IMG/VR virus record: IMGVR_UViG_3300027749_002876
Location: 62,001-126,000 of that record
Direction: 5' to 3' (one strand)
DNA length: 64,000 nucleotides
Each line of letters begins with the position of its first letter. Within the stretch, counting starts at the first letter, position 1. A program made the translations under genes and the position numbers. The notes beneath the pieces were generated by a model. That model was not told the origin of the DNA. It saw only the letters and a list, made by a program, of their open reading frames with translations, and did not search any database. Shown in pieces: positions 42,861 through 57,330 of the stretch.

Positions 42861-43754
42861 ATGAGTATGTCAGAAATATTGCAATGGTCTACTGGATTAA
42901 ATGGGTACAAAAAACATACCCTGCATGATAATCATTTTACTACAGAATTAACAGAATGTCAATTTGAACCGGGTAGAAGTGTGGATGATATATTCTATGA
43001 CCATTTAGTAGATTGCCCAAATAGTCCAATTGAGTTACTCTATAGCGGCGGATTGGATAGTGAACTGGTTCTTATGTCTTTATTAAAAAATAAGATACCA
43101 GTAGAAGCAATGACTATGGTTATTACTATTAAAGGTGCAATATTGAATGTAGTGGATCTGTATTACTCAGAAAAGTTTTGTAGGGAAAATAATGTCAAAC
43201 AGAATTTATTCTACTTTGATGCTATTGACTTTTATGAGAGCGGTAAGTATTTAGAGTATGCTCTGCCATTTAAAATAACAGAACCGCATGTTCCTAGTCA
43301 TTTTTGGTTAATAGAACAATGTCATAACTACCCAATCGTTGGTGGTGATTGGCCCTGGCTACAAGCAGAGAAAAATGTGTTGAGTCCATTTAAATTGGCA
43401 TTCAGTAGTTATGAACGATTCATGCAATCAAAGAGTATACCCGGTATAGGCAACATGATAAGTCACAGCTTTGAATCTAGTTATCATTTCATTGAACAGC
43501 ATTTAAAAGAACATAAGAGGGGTAATGATAAATTTCATACAGTGCCTTTCTTAAAGTACAAGATGTATGGTACAAAGGAACCTAGAATAAAAAGTTATGG
43601 TTGGGAACAATGTCCTAGAGAACTTTTTAACATTACTAAATATCAAATTGAATTATTAAAAAAACTTGGTGTCCCAAAGTCTAATATAGTTTGGGGCAAT
43701 CAAGTTGCAACTTTAATTAACTCAACTGTAACATCTAATAATCTTTTTATATGA
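42861..43754 (+). CDS. PP-loop (adenine nucleotide alpha-hydrolase-like) protein
   Basis: LLYSGGLDSE. Confidence 0.7.
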   Translation: MSMSEILQWSTGLNGYKKHTLHDNHFTTELTECQFEPGRSVDDIFYDHLVDCPNSPIELLYSGGLDSELVLMSLLKNKIPVEAMTMVITIKGAILNVVDLYYSEKFCRENNVKQNLFYFDAIDFYESGKYLEYALPFKITEPHVPSHFWLIEQCHNYPIVGGDWPWLQAEKNVLSPFKLAFSSYERFMQSKSIPGIGNMISHSFESSYHFIEQHLKEHKRGNDKFHTVPFLKYKMYGTKEPRIKSYGWEQCPRELFNITKYQIELLKKLGVPKSNIVWGNQVATLINSTVTSNNLFI

Positions 43755-44326
43755 ATATCCACGAATCATTCTCACATAGTTTAGTACAAAGCAAGTTATG
43801 GTTATGTGAAAGAATAGAACAGGTTATTGATAATGAAGGTATCAAGAATCCTGCAGTCAACATATTAGCCAGTTGGGATAGCTTATTAGCTTTTATGATG
43901 CTAACAAGACGCCCTAGATTTTATGGTATTGTTAATGCGTATGACATTGATCCAATTGCAACAGAAAATGCAAACAAGTTATGCGACCATTGGCAATTTG
44001 AATATCCTAAGGTTTACAACCACACAAGAGACATAAACACCCTTGACTTTAGTAACACCGGAAGTGAATCTATCTTTATCAATTGTAGTGTTGACCAATT
44101 AGATAACACAAGTTGGTATGATGTTATACCTGACAACAGATTGGTATGTTTTCAAAGCACAAACTTACCTATTAATACAATTGATTGGGATATAAAGCAA
44201 AGTTATGCTGATATGTCATTGTTCACTGAAACATATAAAGTTCAAAAACTAATTTACTGTGACTCAATTAACATCAACTATGAGCATTTAAGATTCAAAC
44301 GCCACATGATGATTGGTGTCAAGTAA
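43751..44326 (+). CDS. SAM-dependent methyltransferase-like protein
   Basis: SK.WL, AYDIDP, INCS, RHM.IG.K. Confidence 0.6.
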   Translation: MNIHESFSHSLVQSKLWLCERIEQVIDNEGIKNPAVNILASWDSLLAFMMLTRRPRFYGIVNAYDIDPIATENANKLCDHWQFEYPKVYNHTRDINTLDFSNTGSESIFINCSVDQLDNTSWYDVIPDNRLVCFQSTNLPINTIDWDIKQSYADMSLFTETYKVQKLIYCDSININYEHLRFKRHMMIGVK

Positions 44327-45509
44327 CATCTTTCATGTAGTACATTTTAGAATAGCATCCTAACGTGCCTTGATACGGATCTTCTTTGTTAAAGATATTA
44401 GCATAGTGTGTTTTCAAATAAGTCATAGCGTCACTAAAGTTGTGTGCTGACTTCCATTTATCATCTGTGGCATTTTTTAGTAGTCGCTGAAATACTTGTT
44501 CACGACCCTCAGTCTTATACTTACTCTTACCATTCTGAATACTTAGATTAATATTCCATGCCGCGCCCCTACCAGATGCAATACAAAAATCATCATAGTA
44601 TTCACTGTGACTGTTGCCGCAATAATCTTTTAAAAATTCACTTGTAATTTTATTTGATTTAATTACTTTTTCAGGTCTAGTGATAGAAAAACTCGTAGGA
44701 GCGGAGCCTAATTTAGTATTAATTAATGGATCAATTTGCTCTGGTTTGTATATTACAGTAGTACCATACATTCTCTCAATATGATTTAATGTCATCCATG
44801 ATTGTTTCAGATGAAGTTTAGGCATGTCCGGAGCATAATAAAACAACTCAATGTTTAGAATGTCAGTCATATACGTTTCCATAGTCTTATCAATGACTGT
44901 AGAATAATACTTACCATCTTCTAATACAATACGTGGTTTATCAACACCTAAGATAACACCGTGATTAGGTTCATCGGCATGCATGATGCTTTTAACATAG
45001 AAGCTAAAATTAGTTGGTTGAAAGTAACCATGTGTCAATGCACTAGCCGGTTTCTCTAGCCAATCATCTAAGAAATAATTATCAAAATCTTCTGGACCTA
45101 CATCAACTGTGGTAATCTTTGTATTTGGGTATGCTTTCAAAAACTCTTGTACTTGCGGATATATTAAACGAATCAATTCATCTTGTCGTACAGGGTTTGT
45201 TCGTAGGTTTAACAATACAATTTCATCTAATGGTATATTAAAATGATAAAAACATCTTAGAATGTGATGACTATCACGGCCTGCGCTATAGAACAAACTT
45301 AGCTTGTTATAACGCTGACGCAATTGTGTACATCTATCATAACACAATTGATCCCATGTTTCTGTTGGTTCAACTGTCCAGTCTAATGTGTCATATGCTT
45401 CTTCATAAAAGTAGAAGTGTGGTTTAGTTTTTAATTTGTATGCGGCTCTCCACGCATCAATTTGACTTGATGTTCTGTTTCCGTCTACGATCCAATGTGG
45501 TAAATACAT
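44319..45509 (-). CDS. PP-loop protein
   Basis: LFYSAGRDSH.IL..F, G.DKP. Confidence 0.65.
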   Translation of the reverse strand: MYLPHWIVDGNRTSSQIDAWRAAYKLKTKPHFYFYEEAYDTLDWTVEPTETWDQLCYDRCTQLRQRYNKLSLFYSAGRDSHHILRCFYHFNIPLDEIVLLNLRTNPVRQDELIRLIYPQVQEFLKAYPNTKITTVDVGPEDFDNYFLDDWLEKPASALTHGYFQPTNFSFYVKSIMHADEPNHGVILGVDKPRIVLEDGKYYSTVIDKTMETYMTDILNIELFYYAPDMPKLHLKQSWMTLNHIERMYGTTVIYKPEQIDPLINTKLGSAPTSFSITRPEKVIKSNKITSEFLKDYCGNSHSEYYDDFCIASGRGAAWNINLSIQNGKSKYKTEGREQVFQRLLKNATDDKWKSAHNFSDAMTYLKTHYANIFNKEDPYQGTLGCYSKMYYMKDVT

Positions 45510-45510
45510 A

Positions 45511-46392
45511 TTATTTCTTCGCTACTGATTTTACAATGTTTCTAATTTCTTCTGTTGTATAAAACATAGGGCCCGATGACATTGATTCTAATCTGTTCAA
45601 TACATCAATATCCTTGTTGCATTCGTATATTGAATTTACTAACATACTTCTTGCTTCTTTACTAGCAGAAGGGTTTACACTTAACAGAATACCCAAAGGC
45701 ATTTTACTCAATTTTTTACTAAAAGTTTGTACGCTTTCGTGATTGTACTTGTTTGCTGTTCGTTTGTCAAACGTACTGGCAATGATTTTGACCTTTCCTG
45801 ATTCAATCATTGGCTTCGCTCCAATGTATGTGTCTAGTAGGATATCCAAACTACCATTCACTGTATCAGTTAACATGTTGACATTGTTTTTATAAGGTAT
45901 AACTTGATACGGGATGTTCAACTCAGTAAACAATGTCTCAATCATAAAGTTACCTAACACTGTGCTTGAACCTGCATTGATTGGTCTAGTCTTTGATAGT
46001 GTTCTCAACTCATCAATTGTATCAGTCTTGCCTGTCTTACCTACAAACACCATTGCAATTTGATTCATGTATACAGTTGGATTAATATCTTCTAGTAAGT
46101 CAATATTAGGAAAGCTACCCAACATGTTCAGCCCAAAATTTCCCACTAACAAGTTAGTAACCTTGTCAGTATCTTTTGCTTGCTGTAATGTGTTGATTGC
46201 TATTAAACCATTTGCACCCGGTTTGAATTCTTTTAATACATTAATCTTTTGACGTTCTAAACAACCAGTATAGGTATCCACAACTATATCAGATCCTGAT
46301 CCGGGTCCAGAACTTAGTATGAATTTATACGTGTGTATTTGAGCGTGTGCAATACCAAATAATAGTAAAAATAATGCTAATAGTTTTTTCAT
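45511..46392 (-). CDS. Bug/TctC-family periplasmic binding protein
   Basis: Signal peptide; PGSGSD, KPGANG.IA, IPYK, G.VK.IA. Confidence 0.75.
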   Translation of the reverse strand: MKKLLALFLLLFGIAHAQIHTYKFILSSGPGSGSDIVVDTYTGCLERQKINVLKEFKPGANGLIAINTLQQAKDTDKVTNLLVGNFGLNMLGSFPNIDLLEDINPTVYMNQIAMVFVGKTGKTDTIDELRTLSKTRPINAGSSTVLGNFMIETLFTELNIPYQVIPYKNNVNMLTDTVNGSLDILLDTYIGAKPMIESGKVKIIASTFDKRTANKYNHESVQTFSKKLSKMPLGILLSVNPSASKEARSMLVNSIYECNKDIDVLNRLESMSSGPMFYTTEEIRNIVKSVAKK

Positions 46393-46406
46393 TCAACTAT
46401 TTATAT

Positions 46407-46505
46407 AGAGATAAAGCTCACTTTAGATTTCCTAGTAGCGAATTAGTACGTCAAGCCAGCAGCCGGCTACACCACGGTAACGAGTACCGGTCCTAAGGTG
46501 ATTTC
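46407..46505 (-). ncRNA. Candidate multi-stem structured RNA
   Basis: GC-rich intergenic island; stems UCACCUUAG/CUAAAGUGA, CGGUA/UACCG, AGCCG/UGGCU. Confidence 0.5.
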
Positions 46506-47307
46506 ATTTTAAACCTAAGCTTTTACGTATATTTGTAGCACTGATATTATGTATTGCTTCGTCAAAGGTTTCTTGTTCTATTTTATAACCAACATCACGG
46601 CCATATGTAATATTCACAATGTTTGGTACTACTTGAATTTCATATTGACCTTGATAAAGCATGTCCAAATCACGCTTGATGAATGATTTTACTTTGTCAA
46701 TTTCAAAAGGATTAGAACCCTGCCAACCTTGACAATCTCTAATCTGTATAACAACTTGCCCGGTTTTTGCAATAGCACGTTCGAATAATGCACGATGTCC
46801 AGCATGCCAGGGTTGCCAACGACCCAACATCTGAACTGTAGGTTTTTGCCAATCAAACACAAGGCGCAATCTATTGTCTAGTATATGTGCGGCAATAAAC
46901 TCGCCCCACTTAACAGCATTCTGTTCAGTAATTCTAAAATCATATTGTTCGGGTGGAATAAAGGCTTTGTTGGTATCTTCGTATCTTCCTTTGTCAATTG
47001 TGTCGACCCATACAGTCCAATCTGCTTTAAAGTTGTTACGCATTTCAACTAGTGGTGCAACAAAATCACAAATAACATAATCTACATCTGTCATGCTATC
47101 AGCCAGTTCTCGCATACGTAGACTTTGACGAACTCGACCTTCTGTACTAAAGTCCCAGTCATTGTATTTTTTACGCACATCATCGGCGTTTAACCAACCT
47201 ACACGTTTTTTATCTGCTTGTAAGTGGTCTACTATATATTGTGCTAAGTAAGTTTTACCCGCTCCAGGTAGACCCATTACTAATATTCTTTTAGAACCAT
47301 GATTCAT
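46504..47307 (-). CDS. APS-kinase-like domain fused to an HxGH nucleotidyltransferase domain
   Basis: GLPGAGKT, NAD.VR...DWDFS.EGR, DFVAP; then GRWQPWHAGH. Confidence 0.85.
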   Translation of the reverse strand: MNHGSKRILVMGLPGAGKTYLAQYIVDHLQADKKRVGWLNADDVRKKYNDWDFSTEGRVRQSLRMRELADSMTDVDYVICDFVAPLVEMRNNFKADWTVWVDTIDKGRYEDTNKAFIPPEQYDFRITEQNAVKWGEFIAAHILDNRLRLVFDWQKPTVQMLGRWQPWHAGHRALFERAIAKTGQVVIQIRDCQGWQGSNPFEIDKVKSFIKRDLDMLYQGQYEIQVVPNIVNITYGRDVGYKIEQETFDEAIHNISATNIRKSLGLK

Positions 47308-47983
47308 TTTTTAACTCCAATTGGTGACTGTCAAATCTCTTTAGTCTGTTTATAAATGCAGTAGTTTTCTCTGTCATAACACCTGTCAATTGAAATGTTA
47401 GTCTAGGATTATGTCCTGCATTTGCTGTACAATGAGGTATATTTTGCCAGTCAAATGTTGTTACATCGCCGGCACGCCATTGTTGATATTGATAATTACC
47501 ATATGACCAAAAGTGACCAGGCTCCCAATCATTCAATGCAATCATAACACGCATTATTTTCCATGGTTCTTCTGGTGCCCATTTTTGTAACTTATCAATA
47601 TGTAAGTTCCATACTTCGCCGGGCATTTGTACATGTATACGTTCCATACAATCATCCAATGCAAACAGTTCGCTGACTTTTTGCAATGCAGGGGTCAATT
47701 TCCAATTCAAATGAGTAATAACTATTTTTGGATCTACCCCTGCACGTGTCAGATCATATTCTTCTGCTAGCAAATCTTCTTTAGGTGGTAGTACACCTTC
47801 ACCTTTATAACCGCGTGTTTCCCATGTTGCCGGTTTTACATCTTTGATGATTTCGGCTACATCATTTTTCCAGTCGTGTGTGATTCTACCTAACTTAGTT
47901 ACTTTATCAACTTGTGAATCGTTCTTAAAATTATCAAAGTGATAATTACTTTTTGCTTTTGTTGTGTCCCAACTACTAATCAT
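47291..47983 (-). CDS. Fe(II)/2OG-dependent oxygenase-like protein
   Basis: PG....LHID...W..G...W.AGD......PH.TANAG..PR. Confidence 0.75.
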   Translation of the reverse strand: MISSWDTTKAKSNYHFDNFKNDSQVDKVTKLGRITHDWKNDVAEIIKDVKPATWETRGYKGEGVLPPKEDLLAEEYDLTRAGVDPKIVITHLNWKLTPALQKVSELFALDDCMERIHVQMPGEVWNLHIDKLQKWAPEEPWKIMRVMIALNDWEPGHFWSYGNYQYQQWRAGDVTTFDWQNIPHCTANAGHNPRLTFQLTGVMTEKTTAFINRLKRFDSHQLELKNESWF

Positions 47984-48612
47984 AGTGTGTCCTTTATTCC
48001 ACTTACTTTTCTTACAAGACTATCTAACTCTTGTCTTTCGATACTTTTAAAATATTTGCTATTTGCATCTTCTTCTAATATGATATTTATTCTAGGATCG
48101 TCATACGCTATAGGAAAGTCTAACTGCTTAGATAAGCTTTGTAGATATTTACCCTTATACAAATACAGTAGTTCTTGGCTTATGAATACTGAATCTAATG
48201 TCATTAGATACTCAAGTGGTTCATCAAAGTCAGATAGACTAACTCTATCTCTTACTCTATGTTGTTGATGCTTTAAAATATTTTGGTCTCTGCCAATGAT
48301 TGCTATTTTAACTTTGATACCAAATTTCTCTAGTGTCTCAACAAACAGTTTGTATTTGGGTATAGTAACAACCCCGTTATTTGCATAAGGGCAACTGATG
48401 CTGGTTACATAATTATCACATTTTGACCAGTCAATACTATGAACAAGACTAGGTGTATTCCAGCATTCACTAAAAGGTTCATGGTCATGTGCTATCCAAT
48501 AATCAATAAGCAATTCTTTCCAACCAGATACATCTTGGTGTAGTGCTAATACTTTACTGAACACATGATTACCGGATCCTTGTGGTCCGGTAATAATTAA
48601 CAGTTGTTTCAT
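47980..48612 (-). CDS. Sulfotransferase-like P-loop protein
   Basis: IITGPQGSGN, I.RD. Confidence 0.5.
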   Translation of the reverse strand: MKQLLIITGPQGSGNHVFSKVLALHQDVSGWKELLIDYWIAHDHEPFSECWNTPSLVHSIDWSKCDNYVTSISCPYANNGVVTIPKYKLFVETLEKFGIKVKIAIIGRDQNILKHQQHRVRDRVSLSDFDEPLEYLMTLDSVFISQELLYLYKGKYLQSLSKQLDFPIAYDDPRINIILEEDANSKYFKSIERQELDSLVRKVSGIKDTL

Positions 48613-49229
48613 ATCACTGTAACTCTTACATCTGATGCACCGTAGTCTTGATAATAATCATTAGGAGGCAATTGTATTTTTAACATCTTGCAGAGCATGT
48701 GATTAGTTAATGGAACTTTACCGGGATATTTGTAGTTTGCTTTAACTATGCCCTGATTCTGTTGTTTAATCTTCTCTGCCATGACTTTCAAGTTCTGATA
48801 GTATTCACTGTAGTCAGGGTATGTAATGTCAAAGTGACCGCACTTGACCCACCACCCTAAACACGCATCATCAGGACGATGTACTAACACGATAGGACAA
48901 TCAGGCCATGTTTCTTTGATGTAATCAATATGATTGCTGAACACATGACTTTTAATGATACGTACACCTTCACCGGTAAATGCTTCATCAAAGTCACGCT
49001 CTAATGTTTCTCTATCATACATTGGTAATCGATGAAATAGTTTACCAAACTCCATGCCAGGGTCGTAGTATGCACCTAAATGCATCAATTCCATTTTGCC
49101 ACTGGCGTCATGGTAATATGTTCTAGTATCACTGTAATCTGATTGGTCAACGCTAGGACTATAGTAGATGTTCTTTACAACACTAGACCATTTACTGCCC
49201 GGTGCTCCTGCGACAAATATGTATTTCAT
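48609..49229 (-). CDS. Sulfotransferase-like protein
   Basis: IFVAGAPGSKWS, IIKSH, WP...IVLVHR. Confidence 0.6.
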   Translation of the reverse strand: MKYIFVAGAPGSKWSSVVKNIYYSPSVDQSDYSDTRTYYHDASGKMELMHLGAYYDPGMEFGKLFHRLPMYDRETLERDFDEAFTGEGVRIIKSHVFSNHIDYIKETWPDCPIVLVHRPDDACLGWWVKCGHFDITYPDYSEYYQNLKVMAEKIKQQNQGIVKANYKYPGKVPLTNHMLCKMLKIQLPPNDYYQDYGASDVRVTVI

Positions 49230-50207
49230 TTAATCCTTAGATAGGTCAATCTTACTTAGCACAGGCAAGAATGCCGCGCGTAAATCGTCCATATGTTTTT
49301 TCAATCCTGCAGGCGTAAGTTCATCTTCTGCATAGAATATAACATTAGCATCAATGTATTCCTTGTATTCAGTGCTACGGACTGCTTTACTAAACTGTTG
49401 TTGATACCATGCAACAATATCTTTATCTGTGCCAGGTGGTAATTCAATACTCCATGCGGCATACACGTTAATGCCCGGGGCTACTGTGTTTAGTAAGGGA
49501 ACATCAGGAAACTGAGGCATCTTACGTGTGCCAGTAAACCCAATTGGTTTAACTTTGCCACCTTCAATCAATGGTTTAGCAACTGCAATTGGCATGATAC
49601 CAAACTCTGTGCCAGTTTTACCATCATAACTTGCTACGCTAGTAACTGCCGGTAACGGTCCGTTGAATTTAATACTTTTGACAGCATCTTTGTTTCCATT
49701 ACCCTTGTCTAGTAGATATTCAAATGCTGTTCTATGTGCTCCGCCACCAATAGCAACGTTAATGTTTCTACCTGATTGAATGTATTTGATAAACTCTTGC
49801 GGGGTGTTGATGCCACTCTTTACACTAGCAACTAATACTAGAGGGCTCTTTCCCATTGTCAATACGTCAATGAAGCTGTCGTAGTTATACTTCTTAATAT
49901 TCTTTTCCCAGATATCATTCGTTACATATGAACTCATGTGACTTGGTAAGTTGATAGTGTGTCCATCATTAGGAGCTTCTAAAAACTTGTTGTTGGCAAT
50001 GACTGAATCAGCACCAGGAATATTCTGAACTACATATGTGAACTTTGGATTAGATTTCTGTACAATCTCTGCTAGTTTACGAAATGCCATTTCGTTACCA
50101 GCACCGGGAGTGTTACCAATATAAACTTGTACTGGTTTGGTTGGTTCCCATGCAAATGATAACATAGGTAATACTGCTAATGTAAGTGTTGCTAAAATTT
50201 TTTTCAT
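49230..50207 (-). CDS. Bug/TctC-family periplasmic binding protein
   Basis: W.P.KPV......PG.G.E...R.LA, V.NIPGA...IA, DGHT, GKVKPI..TG..R...PDVP, PPGT. Confidence 0.88.
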   Translation of the reverse strand: MKKILATLTLAVLPMLSFAWEPTKPVQVYIGNTPGAGNEMAFRKLAEIVQKSNPKFTYVVQNIPGADSVIANNKFLEAPNDGHTINLPSHMSSYVTNDIWEKNIKKYNYDSFIDVLTMGKSPLVLVASVKSGINTPQEFIKYIQSGRNINVAIGGGAHRTAFEYLLDKGNGNKDAVKSIKFNGPLPAVTSVASYDGKTGTEFGIMPIAVAKPLIEGGKVKPIGFTGTRKMPQFPDVPLLNTVAPGINVYAAWSIELPPGTDKDIVAWYQQQFSKAVRSTEYKEYIDANVIFYAEDELTPAGLKKHMDDLRAAFLPVLSKIDLSKD

Positions 50208-50286
50208 CGTTCCTCCTAATATAAATATGATGACAATATATTTATGCCATTCAGCATAAAAATTTACTAAATATAGAAAAAATCAG

Positions 50287-51015
50287 ATGAATACTAAAAT
50301 TTTTAAGCTATTACAAGAAAATTTACAGCTTGCGTTCAATTTACCCAAGTACAGTAAAATTTCTATAGACGAACAAACTATTGTGCAAGACTTACCTTGG
50401 ACGCCCGCACGATATAGCAAATTCAAAGATAGTGTAGAAGCTGAATTGCATTTGCCCTGCGATTATGTAGGGACACTAGGTGCTATTACTAATGACTTGT
50501 CAGAACGCTATATCCTAAGATTCTTTAGTGAGATATGGAAGCCTAGAACAGGTGACTATGAGCATACTGGATGGGAACTTGCTGATGAAATCAACAAACT
50601 AAACCCGGAGAAAGTACTTGATGTTGGTTGTGGGTATCACCCATTTAAGGGTCGTATTCAGAATATTATTGGCATTGATCCATATAACAATCAAGCTGAC
50701 TATGAGGTTGACATCTTAGAATATAAAGTAAAGCCAGAAAGTCACGATGTTATAATGGCTCTTGGATCTATTAATTTTAATTCACGTGATGAGATTGAAT
50801 CACGGTTCAGTCATTGCATCAATCTATTGAAGAAGGGTGGAAAATTCTATCTACGTGCTAACCCAGGGATCACTCACAAGACAGGGCCGTATGTTGAAAT
50901 ATTTCCTTGGACATTTGAAGTTGTAAATGAATTTGCTGAAAAATATAATCTCAAGTTAGATACTTTTAAGAAAGATAATAATGATAGATTATATTTTGTT
51001 TATACTAAATTATAG
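50287..51015 (+). CDS. Class I SAM methyltransferase with ACP-like N-terminal domain
   Basis: VLDVGCG, GIDPY, ALGSINF, LKKGG. Confidence 0.8.
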   Translation: MNTKIFKLLQENLQLAFNLPKYSKISIDEQTIVQDLPWTPARYSKFKDSVEAELHLPCDYVGTLGAITNDLSERYILRFFSEIWKPRTGDYEHTGWELADEINKLNPEKVLDVGCGYHPFKGRIQNIIGIDPYNNQADYEVDILEYKVKPESHDVIMALGSINFNSRDEIESRFSHCINLLKKGGKFYLRANPGITHKTGPYVEIFPWTFEVVNEFAEKYNLKLDTFKKDNNDRLYFVYTKL

Positions 51016-51021: not shown

Positions 51022-51046
51022 AAATAGACCCCGAAAGGTCTATTTT
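51022..51046. terminator. Bidirectional terminator
   Basis: AAAATAGACC-CCGAAA-GGTCTATTTT. Confidence 0.8.
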
Positions 51047-51647
51047 ACATTGTGGGGCCGTTCCCACTTTTGAATCCAACTGAACCGCCTTCTGCCTCGA
51101 TACGTTTGATAACGTCTTCAAACAGGATAGGTGTAAAATCTGTTTGTTCAACACATACACAATGATAACGAACATCGTTTTCATCACTGTATAATGTTAC
51201 ACCTGTCTTAGCGTCAATACCTCTAGCTTTTTTCACTCTATTAGAATGTAAGTGGCCATGAATGTTGACACCAAAACGTCCTAATGATGCCTCATGTAAC
51301 GGGATGTGACTTAAAATCATACCGTTCATTACATGATACGCACGTAATTCACGGAAGTATAATCTATACTCATCATCACGAAAGATATCGTGGTTACCAC
51401 GAATCAATACCTTGTCACCGTTTAAGCGACTCAACGTAATTAATGACTTGCGGTTAATAACTACGTCACCTAAGTGATATACTTTGTCATTTGGACGAAC
51501 TCGGTCGTTCCAACGCTTAATCATTTCCTCATCCATCTCATGTGGATCAGTCCATGGACGAATCTTTGTAACACCGTCTGCTTCGGTGAATCTGCACACG
51601 CCGGCATGACCAAAGTGGGTGTCACTCGTTAAAAATACTGCTGGCAT
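51045..51647 (-). CDS. Calcineurin-like phosphoesterase
   Basis: SDTHFGH, HLGD, GNHD, SH.P, HGHLH. Confidence 0.9.
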   Translation of the reverse strand: MPAVFLTSDTHFGHAGVCRFTEADGVTKIRPWTDPHEMDEEMIKRWNDRVRPNDKVYHLGDVVINRKSLITLSRLNGDKVLIRGNHDIFRDDEYRLYFRELRAYHVMNGMILSHIPLHEASLGRFGVNIHGHLHSNRVKKARGIDAKTGVTLYSDENDVRYHCVCVEQTDFTPILFEDVIKRIEAEGGSVGFKSGNGPTM

Positions 51648-51862
51648 TATACCCTCTCTTTCTTTACTCGTCCGATGCGTGACGTTTTGTTCCAATCATA
51701 AGCGATGCCATCCGGACACTTACCATCACGCACACTGTCTACACCAAACATACCGCATACTTCGAATCCGTCTCCTATGATAGAAATGAATTCGTTTAAT
51801 GACTTAGCATAATCCATTGCTGAATTTAAGTCTACAAATTCTAATTCTTTTACTTTAAACAT
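51647..51862 (-). CDS. Hypothetical protein
   Basis: AAGGA SD. Confidence 0.65.
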   Translation of the reverse strand: MFKVKELEFVDLNSAMDYAKSLNEFISIIGDGFEVCGMFGVDSVRDGKCPDGIAYDWNKTSRIGRVKKERV

Positions 51863-51871: not shown

Positions 51872-52180
51872 TTACGCAACCATCCAGTGGTCGCTTTCTT
51901 TGTATTCGATGGATTCGGCACCATCATATTCATTTATTTTGAATTCTGTTCCTACCGGCATCCATTCTACTTCTAAATCTTTCATACCACCGGTGTAGAT
52001 ATCTGGATACTTCAATGCTACATATGTTGCCAATTCATCCCATTTTTCCTTTTCAACAAACTTTACGATTGCTGGATCAAAAAGAATTTCAGGACATTCA
52101 TAGTTCCATGTGTACCATCCTGCACCGAAGCCAGGACTATACAACACTGCCACCTTACCATCTTCATTTAACTTGTTCAT
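51872..52180 (-). CDS. Conserved phage hypothetical protein
   Basis: VAVLYSPGFGAGW.TWN, F.I.EYDG.E. Confidence 0.75.
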   Translation of the reverse strand: MNKLNEDGKVAVLYSPGFGAGWYTWNYECPEILFDPAIVKFVEKEKWDELATYVALKYPDIYTGGMKDLEVEWMPVGTEFKINEYDGAESIEYKESDHWMVA

Positions 52181-52641
52181 TCTATTCTCTTAAAAGATCG
52201 CCAATCATCAATGTTTGGCTTTTCATCTTCATCATATGTCCAACCTAATGCCTTCATCATACGATGTTTGACAAGTAAGTTAGGGCTACGCCATCTTCCT
52301 ACGTCTTCAAACCCCATCATAACACCAACTTCGCATACTGCACCACTACGGCATACACCTGCAAAACAATGAACAACCACGTTCATTCTATTTTCTTTGG
52401 CATGTTGCAATAGTCTAACCAATTCGTTTGCTTGTTCTTGACTGCAACGCATTGCTTCATCTAAAGCAAAATCATTCTTCTCAATGTCCAAGAATTCAAA
52501 ATTGTGAATCTCTTTGAATTTGTGAGCAGGTGTTGGTCTCCAACTCGCAGGGTCTGTGATGCTAATCAGCATACTATTCTCTCCGGCTTCATGATGAAAT
52601 CTAGTAGGTATATCAGCGGCTGCTACATTTTCAATCCACAT
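52177..52641 (-). CDS. Protein-tyrosine/dual-specificity phosphatase-like protein
   Basis: VVHCFAGVCRS (CX5R). Confidence 0.85.
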   Translation of the reverse strand: MWIENVAAADIPTRFHHEAGENSMLISITDPASWRPTPAHKFKEIHNFEFLDIEKNDFALDEAMRCSQEQANELVRLLQHAKENRMNVVVHCFAGVCRSGAVCEVGVMMGFEDVGRWRSPNLLVKHRMMKALGWTYDEDEKPNIDDWRSFKRIE

Positions 52642-53292: not shown

Positions 53293-53368
53293 TGGCATCC
53301 CGGGTAAGCCTCGAACTTACAACCCCTGGTTTTGGAGACCAGTGCTCTGCCAATTGAGCTACCGAGAT
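53293..53368 (-). tRNA. tRNA-Trp(CCA)
   Basis: Cloverleaf, encoded CCA end. Confidence 0.93.
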
Positions 53369-53375
53369 ATATTCT

Positions 53376-53597
53376 TTATGCGTTTTTTCTAATACGCTTG
53401 AGGTATTCTCTACCCACAAGTCCTGCTTCAATTTCTTGAAGTGCAGTCACAATAGGACCTGCTTTAGAGACTAGTGTAGAACGATGTCCACGCTTTAACT
53501 CTCTTACTCTATGTGAAGCGATAAGAACTAAATCAAATCGATTACCAACCATATTAACGGCGTCTTCACTTGTATATCTTGCTCTGCTTTCAGTCAT
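53376..53597 (-). CDS. rpoZ: RNA polymerase omega subunit
   Basis: AR.T.EDA...VGNRFDLVLIAS.R.REL...TAL.EI..G. Confidence 0.9.
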   Translation of the reverse strand: MTESRARYTSEDAVNMVGNRFDLVLIASHRVRELKRGHRSTLVSKAGPIVTALQEIEAGLVGREYLKRIRKNA

Positions 53598-53608
53598 TTT
53601 CTTCCTTT

Positions 53609-54208
53609 TTAAAATTCAAACATTAATCTTTTCATTGTCTCAAAATAAATTTTAGGTCTTAATGCTAATGCAGGCCTTAATGTTAATACAACTCTTTCAT
53701 TATCTGATTGTGAATTATCCCAATCGTGAAATATTTCGGTATTAAACAATATTGCTTCATTGGGCTGAGCCACCATTGATTTAACCGGGGAGTGTTTAGT
53801 TTTATCAAATCCAACACATTCCCTTGATCCATTATGTTTAGGATCGATTTCATACATAGATAAATCTTCATCACTATACCAGCTGGTCACACACTTATCA
53901 TCTAATATTTTAGAAGTATAATTTATACTAACATGGTCAAATGATCCGTCTTTATGAGCCCTATATGTCATATGCGGCTTTGATATGAATAACGATACCC
54001 GATCAATTTCTAATGGTGGAAATTTTAAGGGAATCATACTCAGCATTTTTTTAGATTCATCTGGCTGTAATTTATAATGAGTAAAATCTTCATTTATCTT
54101 ATAAATATCCGGGGTGATTACATTGCAATAATCTATTATAGACTGTATACCGGCGTGAGTATATCTAATATAATAAGGACTACAATCTTCAATGATTTCG
54201 TATTTCAT
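53609..54208 (-). CDS. Fe(II)/2OG oxygenase- or cupin-like protein
   Basis: AHKD...LFNT...H...N...R..L..R. Confidence 0.6.
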   Translation of the reverse strand: MKYEIIEDCSPYYIRYTHAGIQSIIDYCNVITPDIYKINEDFTHYKLQPDESKKMLSMIPLKFPPLEIDRVSLFISKPHMTYRAHKDGSFDHVSINYTSKILDDKCVTSWYSDEDLSMYEIDPKHNGSRECVGFDKTKHSPVKSMVAQPNEAILFNTEIFHDWDNSQSDNERVVLTLRPALALRPKIYFETMKRLMFEF

Positions 54209-54210
54209 GC

Positions 54211-54864
54211 TTACTCTAAAAATAATAGGTTGTTATTTTTAAATACATCTCTCCAGTATCCTGTGTTAGGTATCAGAGCCCATAATTTAGTATTTTCAAA
54301 AACTATCAATGTTCTATTTTTTTTTGTTTGATTTAATGCGACCGCAACCCCATTAAACCAGGGATGAAAATCATCTCCTAGTAATAATCCGGTATCGGAT
54401 TCATACTTTTCAATATCATGTTTAACATCCAATAATGTATGTGAAGCATCAATAAAGGTAAGATCGTAATGTTTTACTTTCTCAAAATCTTTGCTAGAAG
54501 TAGGGTGTACATTTATATTAGCATACATTTCTTCACCTATACAAAATCTAAATGCATCATGCCATCCTGTAGCTTTTGCAATTTCTCTTGCATCAGCATA
54601 CATAATAGGATCGCCTAGTGCAAATTGCAAATTTTCAAACTCAATATTTAATAATGATTGGCTAGAAACAATTCTAAAATTATCAACTATATCCATGCTT
54701 ACAGAAGAATTTTTACCTCTATAGAGGGCAGTAGTAGAACTACCCAAAAAACAACCTATTTCTAAAATAGAACCATTATCAGGAACATAACCAGCCAATG
54801 TTGAAAGAATTATTAATTCTTTTTCGAGCATCCAACCCGGAATGTTTACATTGTATTTTTGCAT
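54211..54864 (-). CDS. Class I SAM methyltransferase
   Basis: PGWM, LEIGC..GSST, FIDASH, GDD. Confidence 0.85.
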   Translation of the reverse strand: MQKYNVNIPGWMLEKELIILSTLAGYVPDNGSILEIGCFLGSSTTALYRGKNSSVSMDIVDNFRIVSSQSLLNIEFENLQFALGDPIMYADAREIAKATGWHDAFRFCIGEEMYANINVHPTSSKDFEKVKHYDLTFIDASHTLLDVKHDIEKYESDTGLLLGDDFHPWFNGVAVALNQTKKNRTLIVFENTKLWALIPNTGYWRDVFKNNNLLFLE

Positions 54865-54884
54865 ATTGTATTTATGTTTATATT

Positions 54885-54960
54885 TGGAGCGGGAAATCGG
54901 GTTCGAACCGACGACATTCACGTTGGCAACGTGATGCTCTACCAACTGAGCTATTCCCGC
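54885..54960 (-). tRNA. tRNA-Gly(GCC)
   Basis: Cloverleaf. Confidence 0.95.
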
Positions 54961-54967
54961 ATATTCT

Positions 54968-55042
54968 TGGTACATCGACACGGTTTCGAACCGCGGACCC
55001 TCTCCGTGTAAAGGAGACGCTCTACCCCTGAGCTATCGATGC
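54968..55042 (-). tRNA. tRNA-Val(TAC)
   Basis: Cloverleaf. Confidence 0.95.
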
Positions 55043-55052
55043 ATATTTTTAT

Positions 55053-55232
55053 TTAACCCCCTTGAGAGCTGTCTTTAACTTCTGTTTCTCTAGCAATTTT
55101 TTCAAACGCTTCATCTTCATTCTTTTGATCCTCAATCATTCTTGGATCAGGCTTACGAAAGATTTTGTCATAGTTGTTTGCATATTCTTGTTGACTGACA
55201 CTGTATGGTCTTGGACTAGAACCTTTGCTCAC
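55053..55232 (-). CDS. Small protein, 59 aa (MSKGSSPRPYSVSQQEY...DKIF), GTG start, not in the ORF track
   Basis: GTGA overlap with the upstream ORF. Confidence 0.6.
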   Translation of the reverse strand: MSKGSSPRPYSVSQQEYANNYDKIFRKPDPRMIEDQKNEDEAFEKIARETEVKDSSQGG

Positions 55233-55399
55233 TTCTTGTCCCCTTTACCCCCACTGTATGATCGCAAACCTTCTTGTGCAATCTTAGCATAGCTACGCAA
55301 AAATGAACCACGTACATGTGGATCAAGAATTTGAGCGGCTGCAATCTTTACTAGCTTACCGATTTTAACGGCTTTTGGGTCATAACCTCTGCATGTCAT
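55229..55399 (-). CDS. Small hypothetical protein
   Basis: AGGA SD before MTCRGYD. Confidence 0.6.
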   Translation of the reverse strand: MTCRGYDPKAVKIGKLVKIAAAQILDPHVRGSFLRSYAKIAQEGLRSYSGGKGDKK

Positions 55400-55422
55400 A
55401 CTATCTTCCTTTGTTAAAAACT

Positions 55423-55499
55423 TGGTCGGAATAGTAGGATTCGAACCTACGACCTCTTGCTCCCAAAGCAAGCGCACTACCAGGCTGTGCTACACTCCG
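55423..55499 (-). tRNA. tRNA-Pro(TGG)
   Basis: Cloverleaf. Confidence 0.95.
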
Positions 55500-55503
55500 T
55501 AAT

Positions 55504-55577
55504 TGGATGCGGGTGACAGATTCGAACTGCCGATGCACCTGGCTTATGAGACCGGTGTGGTGACCACCCAACCCGCG
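55504..55577 (-). tRNA. Atypical initiator-like tRNA(CAT)
   Basis: CGCGGG 5' end, C1:A72 mismatch, truncated D-arm. Confidence 0.7.
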
Positions 55578-55581
55578 TATT

Positions 55582-56268
55582 TCACAATTCTGCATAATTA
55601 GTAATACTTGGTGGTTTAGCAAACGCATCCACATACATAATCTTACTGTTATCTTTTATTGTTAATTTATTAATGTAATTATACACTACTTCAAAAGTTT
55701 GTTTGTATATTTCGGGATTATCGTATGTAAAATGCGGAGCTATAGCTGTTGCTATTGCACCTTTGTCATTGTGTTCGGCAAATGCCCTCATCATGTGAGC
55801 TTGCATTGCTTTGCTTCCTGCATACCCCGCATAACTTGTCCATTCATTACGATTGAACTTTACTGCCATATATGATATAATAAAAATAATTTTACTATTT
55901 TCATTCATTCGTTTTAATGCTTCTACACCCAAAACATGAGGTATATGGCATGCAAGTCTTATATTCTCTTCCCATCTTTTTAAGTCAACTACACTAGTAG
56001 AAGTAAAGCAATTTTCATCATTTGGATAAGAACCTGAATTGGAATTAAAAAGAATCATATCAACAGTATCAACATCTTTGGTCACTTCATTAAATGCTTC
56101 TACTACACATTGAACACTATCAAAGTTTGCTTTGATATCATGTGGATGTCCTGTATTGTAATTCTTGTGAGATACAATATAAACGTTATGACCATCAGTA
56201 CGCATACGCAATACTAGGTCATTACCAAACTTACCGGGTTCACCTCCCCCTATTATCACTATGTTCAT
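55582..56268 (-). CDS. Short-chain dehydrogenase/reductase-like protein
   Basis: IGG...G.FG, YAGSK (YxxxK). Confidence 0.75.
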   Translation of the reverse strand: MNIVIIGGGEPGKFGNDLVLRMRTDGHNVYIVSHKNYNTGHPHDIKANFDSVQCVVEAFNEVTKDVDTVDMILFNSNSGSYPNDENCFTSTSVVDLKRWEENIRLACHIPHVLGVEALKRMNENSKIIFIISYMAVKFNRNEWTSYAGYAGSKAMQAHMMRAFAEHNDKGAIATAIAPHFTYDNPEIYKQTFEVVYNYINKLTIKDNSKIMYVDAFAKPPSITNYAEL

Positions 56269-56288
56269 ATTATGAGTCCTCAAGTATT

Positions 56289-56364
56289 TGGTGGAGGATA
56301 CCAGGATCGAACTGGTCACCTACTGCTTGCAAAGCAGCCGCTCTCCCAAATGAGCTAATCCCCC
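56289..56364 (-). tRNA. tRNA-Ala(TGC)
   Basis: Cloverleaf with G3:U70. Confidence 0.95.
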
Positions 56365-56438
56365 ATGTAGAAACACACTTGATATAGTAGCAAAAGCTAT
56401 CACGGATGAACCCGAGTTTAGTCAAATATGTTTTTATA
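56365..56438 (-). ncRNA. Candidate small RNA with a long closing stem
   Basis: AUAUAAAAACAUAUUUGA/UCAAGUGUGUUUCUACAU. Confidence 0.5.
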
Positions 56439-56515
56439 TGGTGCCCCAGAGGAGACTCGAACTCCTAAAATTTGGCTTCTAAGACCAACACGTATACCAA
56501 TTCCGTCACCAGGGC
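56439..56515 (-). tRNA. tRNA-Leu(TAG) with short variable region
   Basis: Leu-type D-arm, 77 nt. Confidence 0.88.
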
Positions 56516-56516
56516 A

Positions 56517-56605
56517 GTTATAATATAACACACTACGAATCTCCTTCTAAGTTATGGACCTAGCGAGTACTCCAGTTGTGTTCATGTAATGTGTTATATT
56601 ATAAC
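56517..56605 (-). ncRNA. Candidate small RNA / 16-bp inverted repeat overlapping a promoter -10
   Basis: GTTATAATATAACACA/TGTGTTATATTATAAC; TTGACA-17-TATAAT at 56598-56626. Confidence 0.5.
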
Positions 56606-56690
56606 ATATATCTATTTATATGTCAACTATCTTTGGATAAGAAGAACTCAGACGTATGATAACCATTTACCGGTTAGTTATTACAGAGGT

Positions 56691-57227: not shown

Positions 57228-57244
57228 CTAGTATTTAATAACAT

Positions 57245-57318: not shown

Positions 57319-57330
57319 ATAAATATATTT

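What the first reader, a model, noticed from the sequence alone, without database searches (positions are those of the whole stretch)
44319..51015. Biosynthesis-like sulfation cluster wrapped by two orphan Bug receptors
Seen: a tightly coupled minus-strand run of Bug, sulfotransferase-like, sulfotransferase-like, Fe/2OG oxygenase and APS-kinase/nucleotidyltransferase, then a structured RNA, a second Bug and a PP-loop protein, with a divergent methyltransferase. No TctA/TctB is in the window. Established: APS kinase makes PAPS for sulfotransferases, and Bug proteins bind small carboxylates in Betaproteobacteria. Inference: the phage makes a hydroxylated, sulfated or methylated product (small molecule, glycan or virion modification) and encodes periplasmic receptors for its precursor or for the product itself. 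That would be a candidate small-molecule communication or surface-modification system.
Basis: partly seen in the sequence, partly recalled or inferred. Interest (0 to 1): 0.8.

Follow-up and report, generated by a model that had tools for sequence, protein, structure and literature searches.

The report
Phage solute-uptake and sulfotransferase-like cassette
A large freshwater phage carries a tightly packed gene set (two exported solute receptors, two sulfotransferase-like proteins, a methyltransferase, a probable oxygenase and an APS-kinase-like enzyme). It is one version of a cassette shared by hundreds of uncultured aquatic phages, most likely used to take up an organic acid and chemically tailor it, but the compound is unknown.

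Summary
The genes are real, in the order described and tightly coupled. Both Bug proteins are true TTT-family solute receptors with export signals. The kinase is APS-kinase-like, fused to a small NMNAT-like nucleotidyltransferase. The two "sulfotransferase-like" proteins are divergent members of the sulfotransferase/P-loop-kinase fold, neither has a kinase Walker-A lysine, and PAPS binding is not shown. The oxygenase call rests on an invariant HxD..H..R motif, and the PP-loop call on a motif only.

The new result is comparative. MT, receptor, ST1, Oxy, ST2 and KinNT recur in related freshwater phages. ST1 and this MT occur fused in other phages. In more than 80 viral contigs, including marine T4-like myophages, the same genes sit beside a phage TctA permease and a TctC-like receptor. 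In close relatives TctA plus a receptor fill the slot that Bug1 occupies here.

So the receptors are tied to the enzymes, and the tie points to uptake followed by tailoring, not to sensing of a secreted product. The substrate and actual sulfation remain inferred. The "structured RNA" is a highly conserved 106-nt non-coding element with no statistical evidence of structure. Bug2 and the PP-loop genes belong to one sublineage only.

The parts
50287..51015 (+). SAM-dependent methyltransferase (MT), divergently transcribed. Core member of the cassette.
   Evidence: It has weak Pfam class-I MT hits and an LDVGCG motif. The PDB profile finds generic small-molecule MTs. A domain 35% identical over 196 aa (E 1e-42) is fused to the C-terminus of ST1-family proteins in other phages. 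It is present in 39 of 40 Bug1 loci and 64 of 84 TctA loci.
49230..50207 (-). Bug1: exported TTT-family (TctC/Bug) solute-binding protein.
   Evidence: Pfam TctC 2.9e-17 at 63.5 bits. The PDB profile matches TTT receptors at 7e-27 to 4e-16. The N-terminus is signal-peptide-like. The Bug-type loops PGAGNE and GGGAH are conserved. The slot is exchanged between alleles (90% against about 40% identity), or filled by TctA plus BugL in relatives.
48609..49229 (-). ST1: divergent sulfotransferase-fold protein (family of at least 371 clusters at 50% identity).
   Evidence: Sulfotransfer_3 at 0.0048, below the cut-off. 17 of 100 family representatives hit Sulfotransfer_3, best 4.3e-7, and no other family recurs. 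A relative hits Sulfotransfer_4 at 1.4e-4. hhalign against canonical phage sulfotransferases gives probability 42%, E 2.7e-4. The model has pLDDT 92, and PDB fold hits are weak (E >= 0.026), a mix of sulfotransferases and P-loop kinases. The BFVD orthologue is named 'Sulfotransferase family'. Conserved positions are GxPGS[KR]WS, [KR]-S-H (H in 99%) and R118.
47980..48612 (-). ST2: second sulfotransferase-fold protein, unrelated in sequence to ST1.
   Evidence: No Pfam hit. hhalign against canonical phage sulfotransferases gives probability 86%, E 5.5e-6, and aligns GPQGSGNH with GLPRSGST and R108 with the conserved Arg. The model has pLDDT 91. The best PDB fold hit is tyrosylprotein sulfotransferase-1 (E 2.9e-4, TM 0.48), followed by PSTK and SULTs. 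The basic residue of the 5'-phosphosulfate loop is Gly here. It is in 38 of 40 Bug1 loci and follows BugL in 7 T4-like loci.
47291..47983 (-). Oxy: probable Fe(II)/2-oxoglutarate oxygenase.
   Evidence: H128, D130, H184 and R194 are invariant in 25 homologues. There is no Pfam hit. The PDB profile gives only non-significant AtsK and DfmD matches at the C-terminal His/Arg region. A 30%-identical homologue in a T4-like locus hits 2OG-FeII_Oxy_3 at 0.016. No relation to TauD or to the 2OG oxygenase of L138 by hhalign.
46504..47307 (-). KinNT: APS-kinase-like P-loop kinase (residues 1-150) fused to a 118-aa NMNAT-like nucleotidyltransferase.
   Evidence: Pfam APS_kinase 4.8e-11 and phrog_10255 4e-50. 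For the N-domain profile, the top full-length PDB matches are APS kinases, best 1e-11; RecA repeats also score, on the P-loop only. D42, R45, F53, R58, Q61 and R64 are invariant or nearly so in A6 and align by eye to the APS-binding positions. The C-domain profile finds NadM and archaeal NMNAT at 3e-7 and 6e-6, with GRWQPWHxGH and ISATxIR motifs. It lies next to canonical sulfotransferases in 16 KinNT-seeded loci and next to ST1 or ST2 in 15 more, of 80 in all.
46393..46503 (-). Conserved 106-nt non-coding element at the 3' end of the enzyme genes.
   Evidence: It is 91-100% identical in 16 loci, and the exact 42-nt core is in 33 viral contigs. In most contigs it starts 11-14 nt after the stop of Oxy or KinNT, and the downstream gene varies. 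There is no Rfam hit, no excess folding energy, no covariation and no ORF.
45511..46392 (-). Bug2: second exported TTT-family solute-binding protein. Accessory, found in one sublineage only.
   Evidence: Pfam TctC 2.4e-10 at 40.8 bits. The N-terminus is signal-peptide-like. It is in 6 of 40 Bug1 loci, and only 50-63% identical between loci whose neighbours are 70-90% identical.
44319..45509 (-). PPloopB: 396-aa protein with an invariant SAGRDS motif. Function unassigned.
   Evidence: No Pfam, PHROG, NCBIfam or PDB profile hit. It is found only in the sublineage that also has Bug2, the 191-aa ORF and PPloopA.
42861..44326 (+). Convergent pair co-conserved with PPloopB: a 297-aa protein with SGGLDS (42861-43754) and a 191-aa ORF (43751-44326).
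   Evidence: No family hits. PPloopA and PPloopB share only the motif region (BLASTP 8e-4). Synteny is shown.
51045..51695 (-). Calcineurin-like metallophosphoesterase next to MT. Membership of the cassette is uncertain.
   Evidence: Pfam Metallophos 4.7e-6. It is adjacent in the closest relatives and in L228, but not in most Bug1 loci.

Best explanation
The region is a permease-less version of a gene cassette that is widespread in uncultured aquatic phages. I read it as an uptake-and-tailoring module.

Proposed mechanism:
1. During infection the phage makes TTT-family solute receptors (Bug1, and here also Bug2), which are exported to the periplasm.
2. The receptors capture an organic anion, probably one bearing a carboxylate.
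3. They hand it to a TTT permease. In this phage that would be the host's TctAB, or a copy outside the window. Many relatives encode their own TctA.
4. In the cytoplasm the imported compound, or a close derivative, is tailored by the probable Fe/2OG oxygenase (hydroxylation), the SAM methyltransferase, and one or two sulfotransferase-fold enzymes.
5. The sulfotransferase-fold enzymes most likely transfer sulfate from PAPS. The APS-kinase-like domain of KinNT would supply PAPS from host APS.

Shown: family or fold of each protein, export signals on the receptors only, co-conservation, ST1-MT gene fusions, and linkage to TctA.

Inferred: direction of transport, PAPS use, order of the reactions, and the nature of substrate and product.
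For: 1. Receptors. Both have TctC Pfam scores above the cut-off, and the PDB profile reaches 7e-27. Only the receptors have signal-peptide-like N-termini.
2. Functional linkage.
- ST1 is fused to an orthologue of this MT in at least 6 representative proteins.
- Those fusion genes lie next to TctA and a TctC-like receptor (hhalign probability 87%) in four independent contigs.
- Among 84 TctA-seeded viral loci, BugL is in 80, MT in 64, an ST1-family gene in 67, Oxy in 15, ST2 in 7 and KinNT in 2. The backbones are T4-like: RegA, gp44/62 and gp43.
- In freshwater relatives L221-L229, TctA plus BugL fill the slot between MT and ST1 that Bug1 fills here.
3. Co-conservation in the window's own lineage: 22 of 40 loci hold all six genes.
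4. Sulfation.
- 17 of 100 ST1-family members hit Sulfotransfer_3.
- ST2 against canonical sulfotransferases gives hhalign probability 86%, and its top fold hit is TPST1.
- Neither protein has a Walker-A lysine.
- The KinNT N-domain is of the APS-kinase family and keeps the APS-contacting residues.
- 31 of 80 KinNT-seeded loci have a sulfotransferase-fold gene within the flanks. These include canonical GLPRSGST sulfotransferases that abut or overlap KinNT.
Against: - No substrate is identified.
- PAPS binding is not shown. The fold matches of ST1 are weak (best E 0.026), and ST2 lacks the Lys/Arg of the 5'-phosphosulfate loop.
- KinNT is absent from the cassette in the closest relatives (L083, L118, L129-L135) and in almost all T4-like versions. 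If sulfation occurs, PAPS must usually come from elsewhere.
- The KinNT C-domain looks like NMNAT, not ATP sulfurylase. In cultured Casjensviridae the gene overlaps a NADAR gene and no sulfotransferase gene is annotated within 5 kb.
- Oxy has no significant family match.
- No TctB was recognised in any version. No TctA or TctB is in this window, so transport here depends on an unverified host or distal partner.
Confidence: 0.45

Rival explanations
1. No sulfation. The ST-fold proteins use another donor or are only binding or scaffold proteins. KinNT is a nucleotide/NAD-type salvage enzyme (kinase plus NMNAT-like adenylyltransferase) that merely sits in the same variable island. The cassette would then be receptor plus permease plus methyltransferase, that is, uptake and methylation of a carboxylate.
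For: - MT, TctA and BugL form the most constant core (64, 83 and 80 of 84 loci), while KinNT is in only 2.
- The KinNT C-domain matches NadM and archaeal NMNAT at 3e-7.
- In Casjensviridae, KinNT overlaps a NADAR gene and no sulfotransferase gene is annotated within 5 kb.
- In ST2 the catalytic basic residue of the loop is replaced by Gly.
- ST1 fold hits include kinases as often as sulfotransferases.
Against: - Sulfotransfer_3 is the only recurrent Pfam family in the ST1 family.
- KinNT sits directly beside canonical sulfotransferases in several lineages.
- The KinNT N-domain keeps the residues that contact APS.
Confidence: 0.2
2. Nutrient scavenging. The cassette imports an organosulfur compound (a sulfonate or sulfate ester with a carboxylate) and releases or re-routes its sulfur for the infected cell. 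The oxygenase does the cleavage, and the ST-fold and APS-kinase-like proteins handle the sulfate.
For: - From established knowledge, TTT and TRAP systems import sulfolactate, taurine, isethionate and DHPS in some bacteria.
- The receptor slot is filled by TctC-type or DctP-type receptors.
- There are weak AtsK (alkylsulfatase) matches at the C-terminal motif of Oxy.
- An APS-kinase-like enzyme is present.
Against: - The AtsK match is not significant (E 0.3).
- hhalign of Oxy against E. coli TauD finds nothing.
- The constant methyltransferase has no role in this scheme.
- No sulfite- or sulfate-assimilation gene was found among the proteins scanned.
Confidence: 0.15
3. The phage builds a hydroxylated, sulfated, methylated product from cell metabolites (a small molecule, glycan or virion modification). 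The Bug proteins are receptors for that product or its precursor, giving a communication or surface-modification system.
For: - From established knowledge, the enzyme set resembles tailoring sets of natural-product clusters (sulfotransferase, APS kinase, 2OG hydroxylase, methyltransferase).
- KinNT-bearing relatives carry nucleotide-sugar and glycosyltransferase genes nearby.
- The receptors are exported.
Against: - Relatives encode the TctA permease in the receptor slot, which points to uptake.
- No scaffold-forming or export gene belongs to the conserved set.
- No lysis-lysogeny regulator or signalling partner was seen among the proteins scanned.
- Receptor types are swapped freely, which is hard to reconcile with sensing one fixed product.
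Confidence: 0.1
4. Unlinked auxiliary genes. The genes are independent morons that lie together only because related phages inherited one variable island.
For: - The region lies between the plus-strand gene block and a 27-tRNA island, among other small accessory genes.
- Content varies between relatives: ST2, KinNT, Bug2 and the PP-loop genes come and go.
Against: - ST1-MT fusion proteins exist.
- The same families recur around TctA in T4-like phages with a different backbone and gene order.
- Homologues stay adjacent at only 31-42% identity (L073, L054, L123, L124).
Confidence: 0.07

Closest known systems
Tripartite tricarboxylate transporters (TctABC) and the Bug family of 'orphan' receptors of Betaproteobacteria
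   Same: Bug1 and Bug2 are family members by profile. They have export signals and the two glycine-rich ligand loops. As with Bug proteins, no permease gene is adjacent in this window.
   Different: The genes are phage-encoded and sit beside sulfotransferase-fold, methyltransferase and oxygenase genes rather than catabolic or regulatory genes. Relatives carry TctA but no recognisable TctB. The ligand is unknown.
Phage auxiliary uptake genes such as cyanophage PstS, and viral tctA reported in SUP05 viruses (PMC4164917, listed in PMC6359870)
   Same: The phage supplies a periplasmic receptor, or a permease, that would plug into host transport during infection. Viral tctA has already been noted as an auxiliary gene of unknown role.
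   Different: Here the transport genes are part of a conserved multi-gene cassette with tailoring enzymes. I found no paper describing that linkage.
PAPS-dependent sulfotransferases (Sulfotransfer_3 / TPST / SULT fold) and viral sulfotransferase AMGs (PMC10580990, PMC8290583)
   Same: They share the fold class and a P-loop-like 5'-phosphosulfate loop without a kinase lysine. In ST1 there is a [KR]-S-H motif like the K-T-H of cytosolic SULTs, followed by an Arg after the next strand. ST2 aligns to canonical phage sulfotransferases.
   Different: Scores are below the curated cut-offs. ST2 lacks the loop Lys/Arg. In ST1 the basic residue is shifted. No donor or acceptor is known. The papers state that the function of phage sulfotransferases is unclear.
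APS kinase (CysC) and bifunctional PAPS synthases
   Same: The KinNT N-domain has a Walker A motif, a DxxR motif, an FS..R motif and an FxxP motif like APS kinases. Like PAPS synthases, it is fused to a nucleotidyltransferase-superfamily domain.
   Different: The lid region is shortened, and the NCBIfam equivalog cut-offs are far from met (32.8 bits against 138.7). The fused domain has 118 aa and resembles NMNAT, not ATP sulfurylase.
Tailoring gene sets of sulfated natural products (for example cylindrospermopsin or saxitoxin: sulfotransferase, APS kinase, 2OG hydroxylase, methyltransferase) and Nod-factor decoration (NodH, NodPQ, NodS)
   Same: The same combination of enzyme classes is present. 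This comparison comes from established knowledge and was not tested here.
   Different: No scaffold synthase is present. The cassette is coupled to an importer rather than an exporter, and it is phage-borne.

Membership tests
TTT solute-binding protein (TctC/Bug, PF03401) | Profile match above the curated cut-off over most of the domain | tested here: met
   Bug1 scores 63.5 bits and Bug2 40.8 bits against a cut-off of 27. The Bug1 profile against solved TTT receptors gives 7e-27.
TTT solute-binding protein (TctC/Bug, PF03401) | Export signal for the periplasm | tested here: met
   Hydrophobic N-terminal 12-mers score 2.2 and 3.0 on the Kyte-Doolittle scale, follow Lys-Lys, and are followed by A-x-A-like sites. 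No other cluster protein shows this. This is a crude rule, not a trained predictor.
TTT solute-binding protein (TctC/Bug, PF03401) | Works with TctA/TctB membrane subunits | tested here: inconclusive
   No TctA is in the window. TctA is adjacent to the homologous cassette in relatives. TctB was not recognised anywhere.
PAPS-dependent sulfotransferase, ST1 | Profile match to a sulfotransferase family | tested here: inconclusive
   The window protein scores 17.6 bits, below the cut-off of 27. 17 of 100 family members match Sulfotransfer_3, best 4.3e-7. hhalign to canonical phage sulfotransferases gives probability 42%.
PAPS-dependent sulfotransferase, ST1 | 5'-phosphosulfate loop, 3'-phosphate Arg/Ser motif and catalytic base | tested here: inconclusive
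   GxPGS[KR]WS is conserved, but the basic residue is shifted. [KR]93-S-H95 is conserved in 97-99% of members. R118 is R or K in 79%, and the Ser position is Gly. The motif comparison to SULTs comes from memory of the family, not from a superposition.
PAPS-dependent sulfotransferase, ST1 | Sulfotransferase fold | tested here: inconclusive
   The model has pLDDT 92. The best PDB hits have E 0.026-0.1 and TM 0.34-0.45, and are a mix of sulfotransferases and P-loop kinases.
PAPS-dependent sulfotransferase, ST2 | Profile or fold similarity to sulfotransferases | tested here: met
   hhalign probability is 86%, E 5.5e-6, against canonical phage sulfotransferases. The top fold hit is TPST1 at E 2.9e-4, and many SULT and TPST hits have TM 0.45-0.52. 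PSTK and other kinases also score.
PAPS-dependent sulfotransferase, ST2 | Lys/Arg in the 5'-phosphosulfate loop | tested here: not met
   The invariant GPQGSGNH aligns with GLPRSGST, and the Arg position is Gly.
   ST1 has GAPGSKWS and ST2 has GPQGSGNH. Neither has the Lys-Ser/Thr pair in register.
APS kinase (CysC), KinNT N-domain | Family profile match plus APS-contacting residues | tested here: met
   Pfam APS_kinase scores 43.3 bits against 21.1. The top full-length PDB matches are APS kinases, best 1e-11. D42, R45, F53, R58, Q61 and R64 are invariant or nearly so, and FVAP is conserved. The NCBIfam equivalog cut-off is not met (32.8 bits against 138.7). It is therefore a family member, not a shown orthologue.
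ATP sulfurylase, KinNT C-domain | Similarity to sulfate adenylyltransferase catalytic domain | tested here: not met
   The best matches are NadM and archaeal NMNAT (3e-7, 6e-6), then pantothenate synthetase and PPAT. No ATP sulfurylase is found.
Fe(II)/2-oxoglutarate oxygenase, Oxy | HxD/E...H iron triad and a basic residue for 2OG, in a matching family profile | tested here: inconclusive
   H128, D130, H184 and R194 are invariant in 25 sequences. There is no Pfam hit. The PDB profile is not significant. A homologue hits 2OG-FeII_Oxy_3 at 0.016.
PP-loop ATP pyrophosphatase, PPloopB and PPloopA | SGGxDS motif within a recognisable PP-loop domain | tested here: inconclusive
   The motifs SAGRDS (invariant) and SGGLDS are present. 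There is no Pfam, NCBIfam, PHROG or PDB profile match.
Structured RNA / riboswitch, 46393-46503 | Known family match, excess stability or covariation | tested here: not met
   No Rfam match at E <= 1. z-scores are +0.78, +0.22 and -0.29. None of 29 pairs has a compensatory change, because the sequences are too alike. Only the strong sequence conservation is shown.

The most novel reading that the evidence does not exclude
Aquatic phages from at least two unrelated lineages carry a portable pathway. It imports a specific dissolved organic acid through a phage-supplied TTT receptor and permease, and converts it by hydroxylation, PAPS-dependent sulfation and methylation into a sulfated metabolite that serves the infection. 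The highly conserved 106-nt element at the end of the enzyme genes would act as an RNA-level control or cassette-boundary signal. This would be the first uptake-coupled small-molecule tailoring pathway assigned to phages, and it would give a function to viral tctA and viral sulfotransferase genes.
Probability: 0.2. Interest if true: 0.8.

Novelty: new variant of a known kind. Interest (0 to 1): 0.62.

Why it matters
Viral tctA genes and viral sulfotransferase genes have each been listed as auxiliary metabolic genes whose role is stated to be unknown (PMC4164917, PMC10580990).

This analysis shows that they belong together. They sit with a specific methyltransferase, and often with an oxygenase and an APS-kinase-like enzyme, in a cassette found in more than 400 TctA-bearing viral contigs. 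It is also found in abundant freshwater jumbo-phage relatives.

That turns several 'unknown AMG' entries into one testable hypothesis: uptake and tailoring of a dissolved organic anion during infection. It also defines a compact set of genes (five to six) that can be expressed and assayed.

If sulfation is confirmed, it would be a new way for phages to alter carbon and sulfur flow in lakes and oceans.

Tried and rejected
- blastn of the region against cultured phages found nothing. tblastn of TctA and ST1 against cultured phages found no credible carrier. The only hits were a single-cell 'Marine virus' for ST1 and likely non-phage records for TctA.
- Sequence-profile searches of ST1, ST2, Oxy and PPloopB against solved structures gave nothing significant.
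- Oxy against E. coli TauD, and against the Pfam-positive 2OG oxygenase of L138, showed no relation. The idea that Oxy is TauD/AtsK-like was therefore dropped to a weak rival.
- I looked in the window for the queuosine-type genes (FolE, QueD, radical SAM) that flank KinNT in other phages. They are absent, so a 7-deazaguanine link for the PP-loop genes was dropped.
- The genome-contig scan for cellular relatives of Bug1 returned only phage-like contigs binned into MAGs and one distant alphaproteobacterial TctC. It gave no host and no cellular context.
- PADLOC gave no defence-system match except a weak generic MT hit.
- The first attempt to scan with a too-diverse receptor alignment failed and was repeated with a narrower one.
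- The second homologue search with the family profile returned only unnamed close relatives.

Full report
**What is there.** The window has about 37% G+C. It is 100% identical in the fetched genes to two IMG/VR viral contigs, one of them 524,565 bp long. Related contigs are 340-375 kb long. No cultured phage matches at the DNA level.

On the minus strand they run:
- Bug1, 49230-50207
- ST1, 48609-49229
- ST2, 47980-48612
- Oxy, 47291-47983
- KinNT, 46504-47307
- a 111-nt gap
- Bug2, 45511-46392
- PPloopB, 44319-45509

A methyltransferase (MT, 50287-51015) is divergently transcribed. The genes abut or overlap by 4 to 17 nt, apart from the one gap. A tRNA island with 27 tRNA genes starts 2 kb further on, at 53293-63157.

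**Identity of the proteins.**
- Bug1 and Bug2. Both pass the Pfam TctC cut-off. A Bug1 profile matches solved TTT receptors at 7e-27. Only these two cluster proteins have signal-peptide-like N-termini.
- KinNT has two domains.
  - For residues 1-150, the top full-length PDB matches are APS kinases (1e-11). The residues that align to the APS-contacting positions are invariant.
  - Residues 150-267 are a minimal HxGH/ISxTxIR nucleotidyltransferase. It is closest to NadM and archaeal NMNAT (3e-7), not to ATP sulfurylase.
- ST1 and ST2 are unrelated to each other in sequence, and neither has a Walker-A GK[S/T].
  - ST2 aligns to canonical phage sulfotransferases with 86% hhalign probability. Its confident model (pLDDT 91) has tyrosylprotein sulfotransferase as top fold match (E 2.9e-4). 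It lacks the basic residue of the phosphosulfate loop.
  - ST1 is weaker on its own: Sulfotransfer_3 at 0.0048, hhalign probability 42%, fold E >= 0.026.
  - ST1 belongs to a family of 371 clusters at 50% identity. Of 100 members, 17 hit Sulfotransfer_3 and no other family recurs. A [KR]-S-H motif and a P-loop-like GxPGS[KR]WS are nearly invariant. A 60%-identical UniProt orthologue is auto-named 'Sulfotransferase family'.
- Oxy has an invariant HxD..H..R pattern in 25 homologues but no significant family match.
- PPloopB and the upstream PPloopA have only the SxGxDS motif.

**Co-conservation.** Among 40 loci found with Bug1, MT is in 39, ST2 in 38, Oxy in 36, ST1 in 34 and KinNT in 27. All six genes are in 22 loci.
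- The trio of MT, receptor and ST1 stays adjacent even when the proteins are only 31-42% identical (L073, L054, L123, L124).
- Bug2, PPloopB, the 191-aa ORF and PPloopA occur only in the closest sublineage. In most of those loci KinNT is missing from the cassette.
- The receptor slot is exchanged. In L132, MT is 99% and ST1 93% identical to the window but Bug1 only 40%.

**The link to transport.**
- The ST1 family includes proteins fused to a C-terminal methyltransferase that is orthologous to the window's MT (35% identity over 196 aa, E 1e-42).
- In four independent contigs, those fusion genes lie beside a TctA permease. In three of them a 353-357-aa protein lies beside TctA and is a divergent TctC-like receptor (hhalign probability 87%, signal peptide present). 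The fourth has a DctP-type receptor and a Pfam-positive 2OG oxygenase instead.
- A scan with these TctA sequences found at least 420 viral loci. In the best 80 plus the four seeds, BugL is in 80, window-type MT in 64, an ST1-family gene in 67, window-type Oxy in 15, ST2 in 7 and KinNT in 2.
- These contigs are T4-like myophages (RegA, clamp loader, gp43 polymerase, Hsp20, NifU) with median G+C 0.36. That backbone differs from the jumbo-phage relatives of the window.
- In freshwater relatives of the window phage (L221-L229), TctA plus BugL lie exactly between MT and ST1, where the window has Bug1.
- Gene fusion, conserved neighbourhood across unrelated backbones, and slot replacement together show that the receptors and the enzymes form one functional unit. 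SBP-dependent TTT systems are importers (established knowledge), so the unit is best read as uptake followed by cytoplasmic tailoring.

**Is it sulfation?**
- For:
  - The only recurrent family signal of ST1 is sulfotransferase, and ST2 resembles sulfotransferases.
  - The kinase is of the APS-kinase family.
  - KinNT lies directly next to canonical sulfotransferases (GLPRSGST loop; Sulfotransfer_3 8e-17) in several lineages. In all, 31 of 80 KinNT-seeded loci have a sulfotransferase-fold gene in the flanks.
- Against:
  - KinNT is often absent from the cassette.
  - Its second domain looks like NMNAT.
  - In cultured Casjensviridae it overlaps a NADAR gene, and no sulfotransferase gene is annotated within 5 kb.
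  - ST2 lacks a catalytic loop residue.
  - No PAPS site could be checked structurally.
- I therefore hold sulfation as the most likely chemistry, but not as shown.

**The 'structured RNA'.**
- The gap holds a 106-nt element that is 91-100% identical in 16 loci. Its 42-nt core is exact in 33 viral contigs.
- The neighbouring proteins have diverged much more: Bug2 to 50-63% and Oxy to 65-83% amino-acid identity.
- In most contigs it begins 11-14 nt after the stop of the last enzyme gene (Oxy or KinNT), whatever lies downstream.
- It has no Rfam match, no excess folding energy, no compensatory changes and no ORF.
- It is a real conserved non-coding feature at the cassette boundary. Its nature (RNA element, regulatory site or recombination junction) is open.

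**Literature.**
- Viral tctA was reported in SUP05 viruses with the remark that its role is unknown (PMC4164917), and it is listed in a review (PMC6359870).
- Phage sulfotransferases are catalogued, with the statement that their function is unclear (PMC10580990, PMC8290583).
- My searches found no description of the combined cassette.

**Verdict.**
- The evidence favours uptake and tailoring of an external solute over production and sensing of a phage-made signal.
- The PP-loop block and Bug2 are lineage-specific additions.
- The cassette is a new, widespread combination of known protein families with unknown substrate.

Noticed in passing
window 53293-63157 (minus strand): There is an array of 27 tRNA genes, including three CAT anticodons. 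It is interspersed with small ORFs: a dual-specificity phosphatase-like ORF (52177-52641), methyltransferase-like ORFs, a short-chain dehydrogenase (55582-56319) and an HNH endonuclease (60360-60947).
   Followed up: partly
window 46393-46503; also L001, L083, L084, L118, L129-L136, L230-L261: A 106-nt non-coding element is far better conserved than the genes around it. In most contigs it starts 11-14 nt after the last enzyme gene of the cassette, and the downstream genes vary. No structure or family could be shown.
   Followed up: yes
L082 and L020 (both from IMGVR_UViG_3300027749_002876): The 524-kb contig that matches the window holds a second KinNT copy (89% identical) about 390 kb away, in a different gene context. 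This is either a paralogue or a sign that the contig joins two related genomes.
   Followed up: no
L005 8692-14550 and similar loci: In many other freshwater phage contigs, KinNT lies between GTP cyclohydrolase I, a 156-aa cytidylyltransferase-like gene, a PTPS/QueD-like gene and a radical-SAM gene. Nucleotide-sugar genes are nearby.
   Followed up: partly
L121 4562-5738; L122 4571-5747 (Xylella phage Bacata, Stenotrophomonas phage Bhz60): Cultured Casjensviridae phages encode a 40%-identical full-length KinNT whose start overlaps a NADAR/COG3236 gene. A gene annotated as 'cysteine dioxygenase' and a MazG gene lie a few kb upstream.
   Followed up: partly
L052 10001-11178: The KinNT match spans 1178 nt instead of about 800. 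This suggests an insertion inside the gene in that contig.
   Followed up: no
L123, L124, L125 (MAG contigs labelled Haliscomenobacter and Flavobacterium): Contigs that carry the phage cassette are binned into Bacteroidota MAGs. L125 has MT, Bug1, ST1, Oxy, ST2 and KinNT at 45% G+C. This is probably phage DNA in the bins, but it could be a hint about hosts.
   Followed up: partly
P0144 (798 aa): One ST1-family protein carries a roughly 640-aa extension rich in Ser, Thr and Gly, with no Pfam match.
   Followed up: no
L228 8474-10400; L227; L094/L095: Some relatives carry two or three tandem ST1 paralogues and two Oxy paralogues in one cassette.
   Followed up: no
window 530-1732, 20922-21941, 37549-38877: Other accessory-looking genes lie in the window: an AAA+/Clp-like ATPase (phrog_4339), a glycosyltransferase and a TPR-repeat protein.
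   Followed up: no
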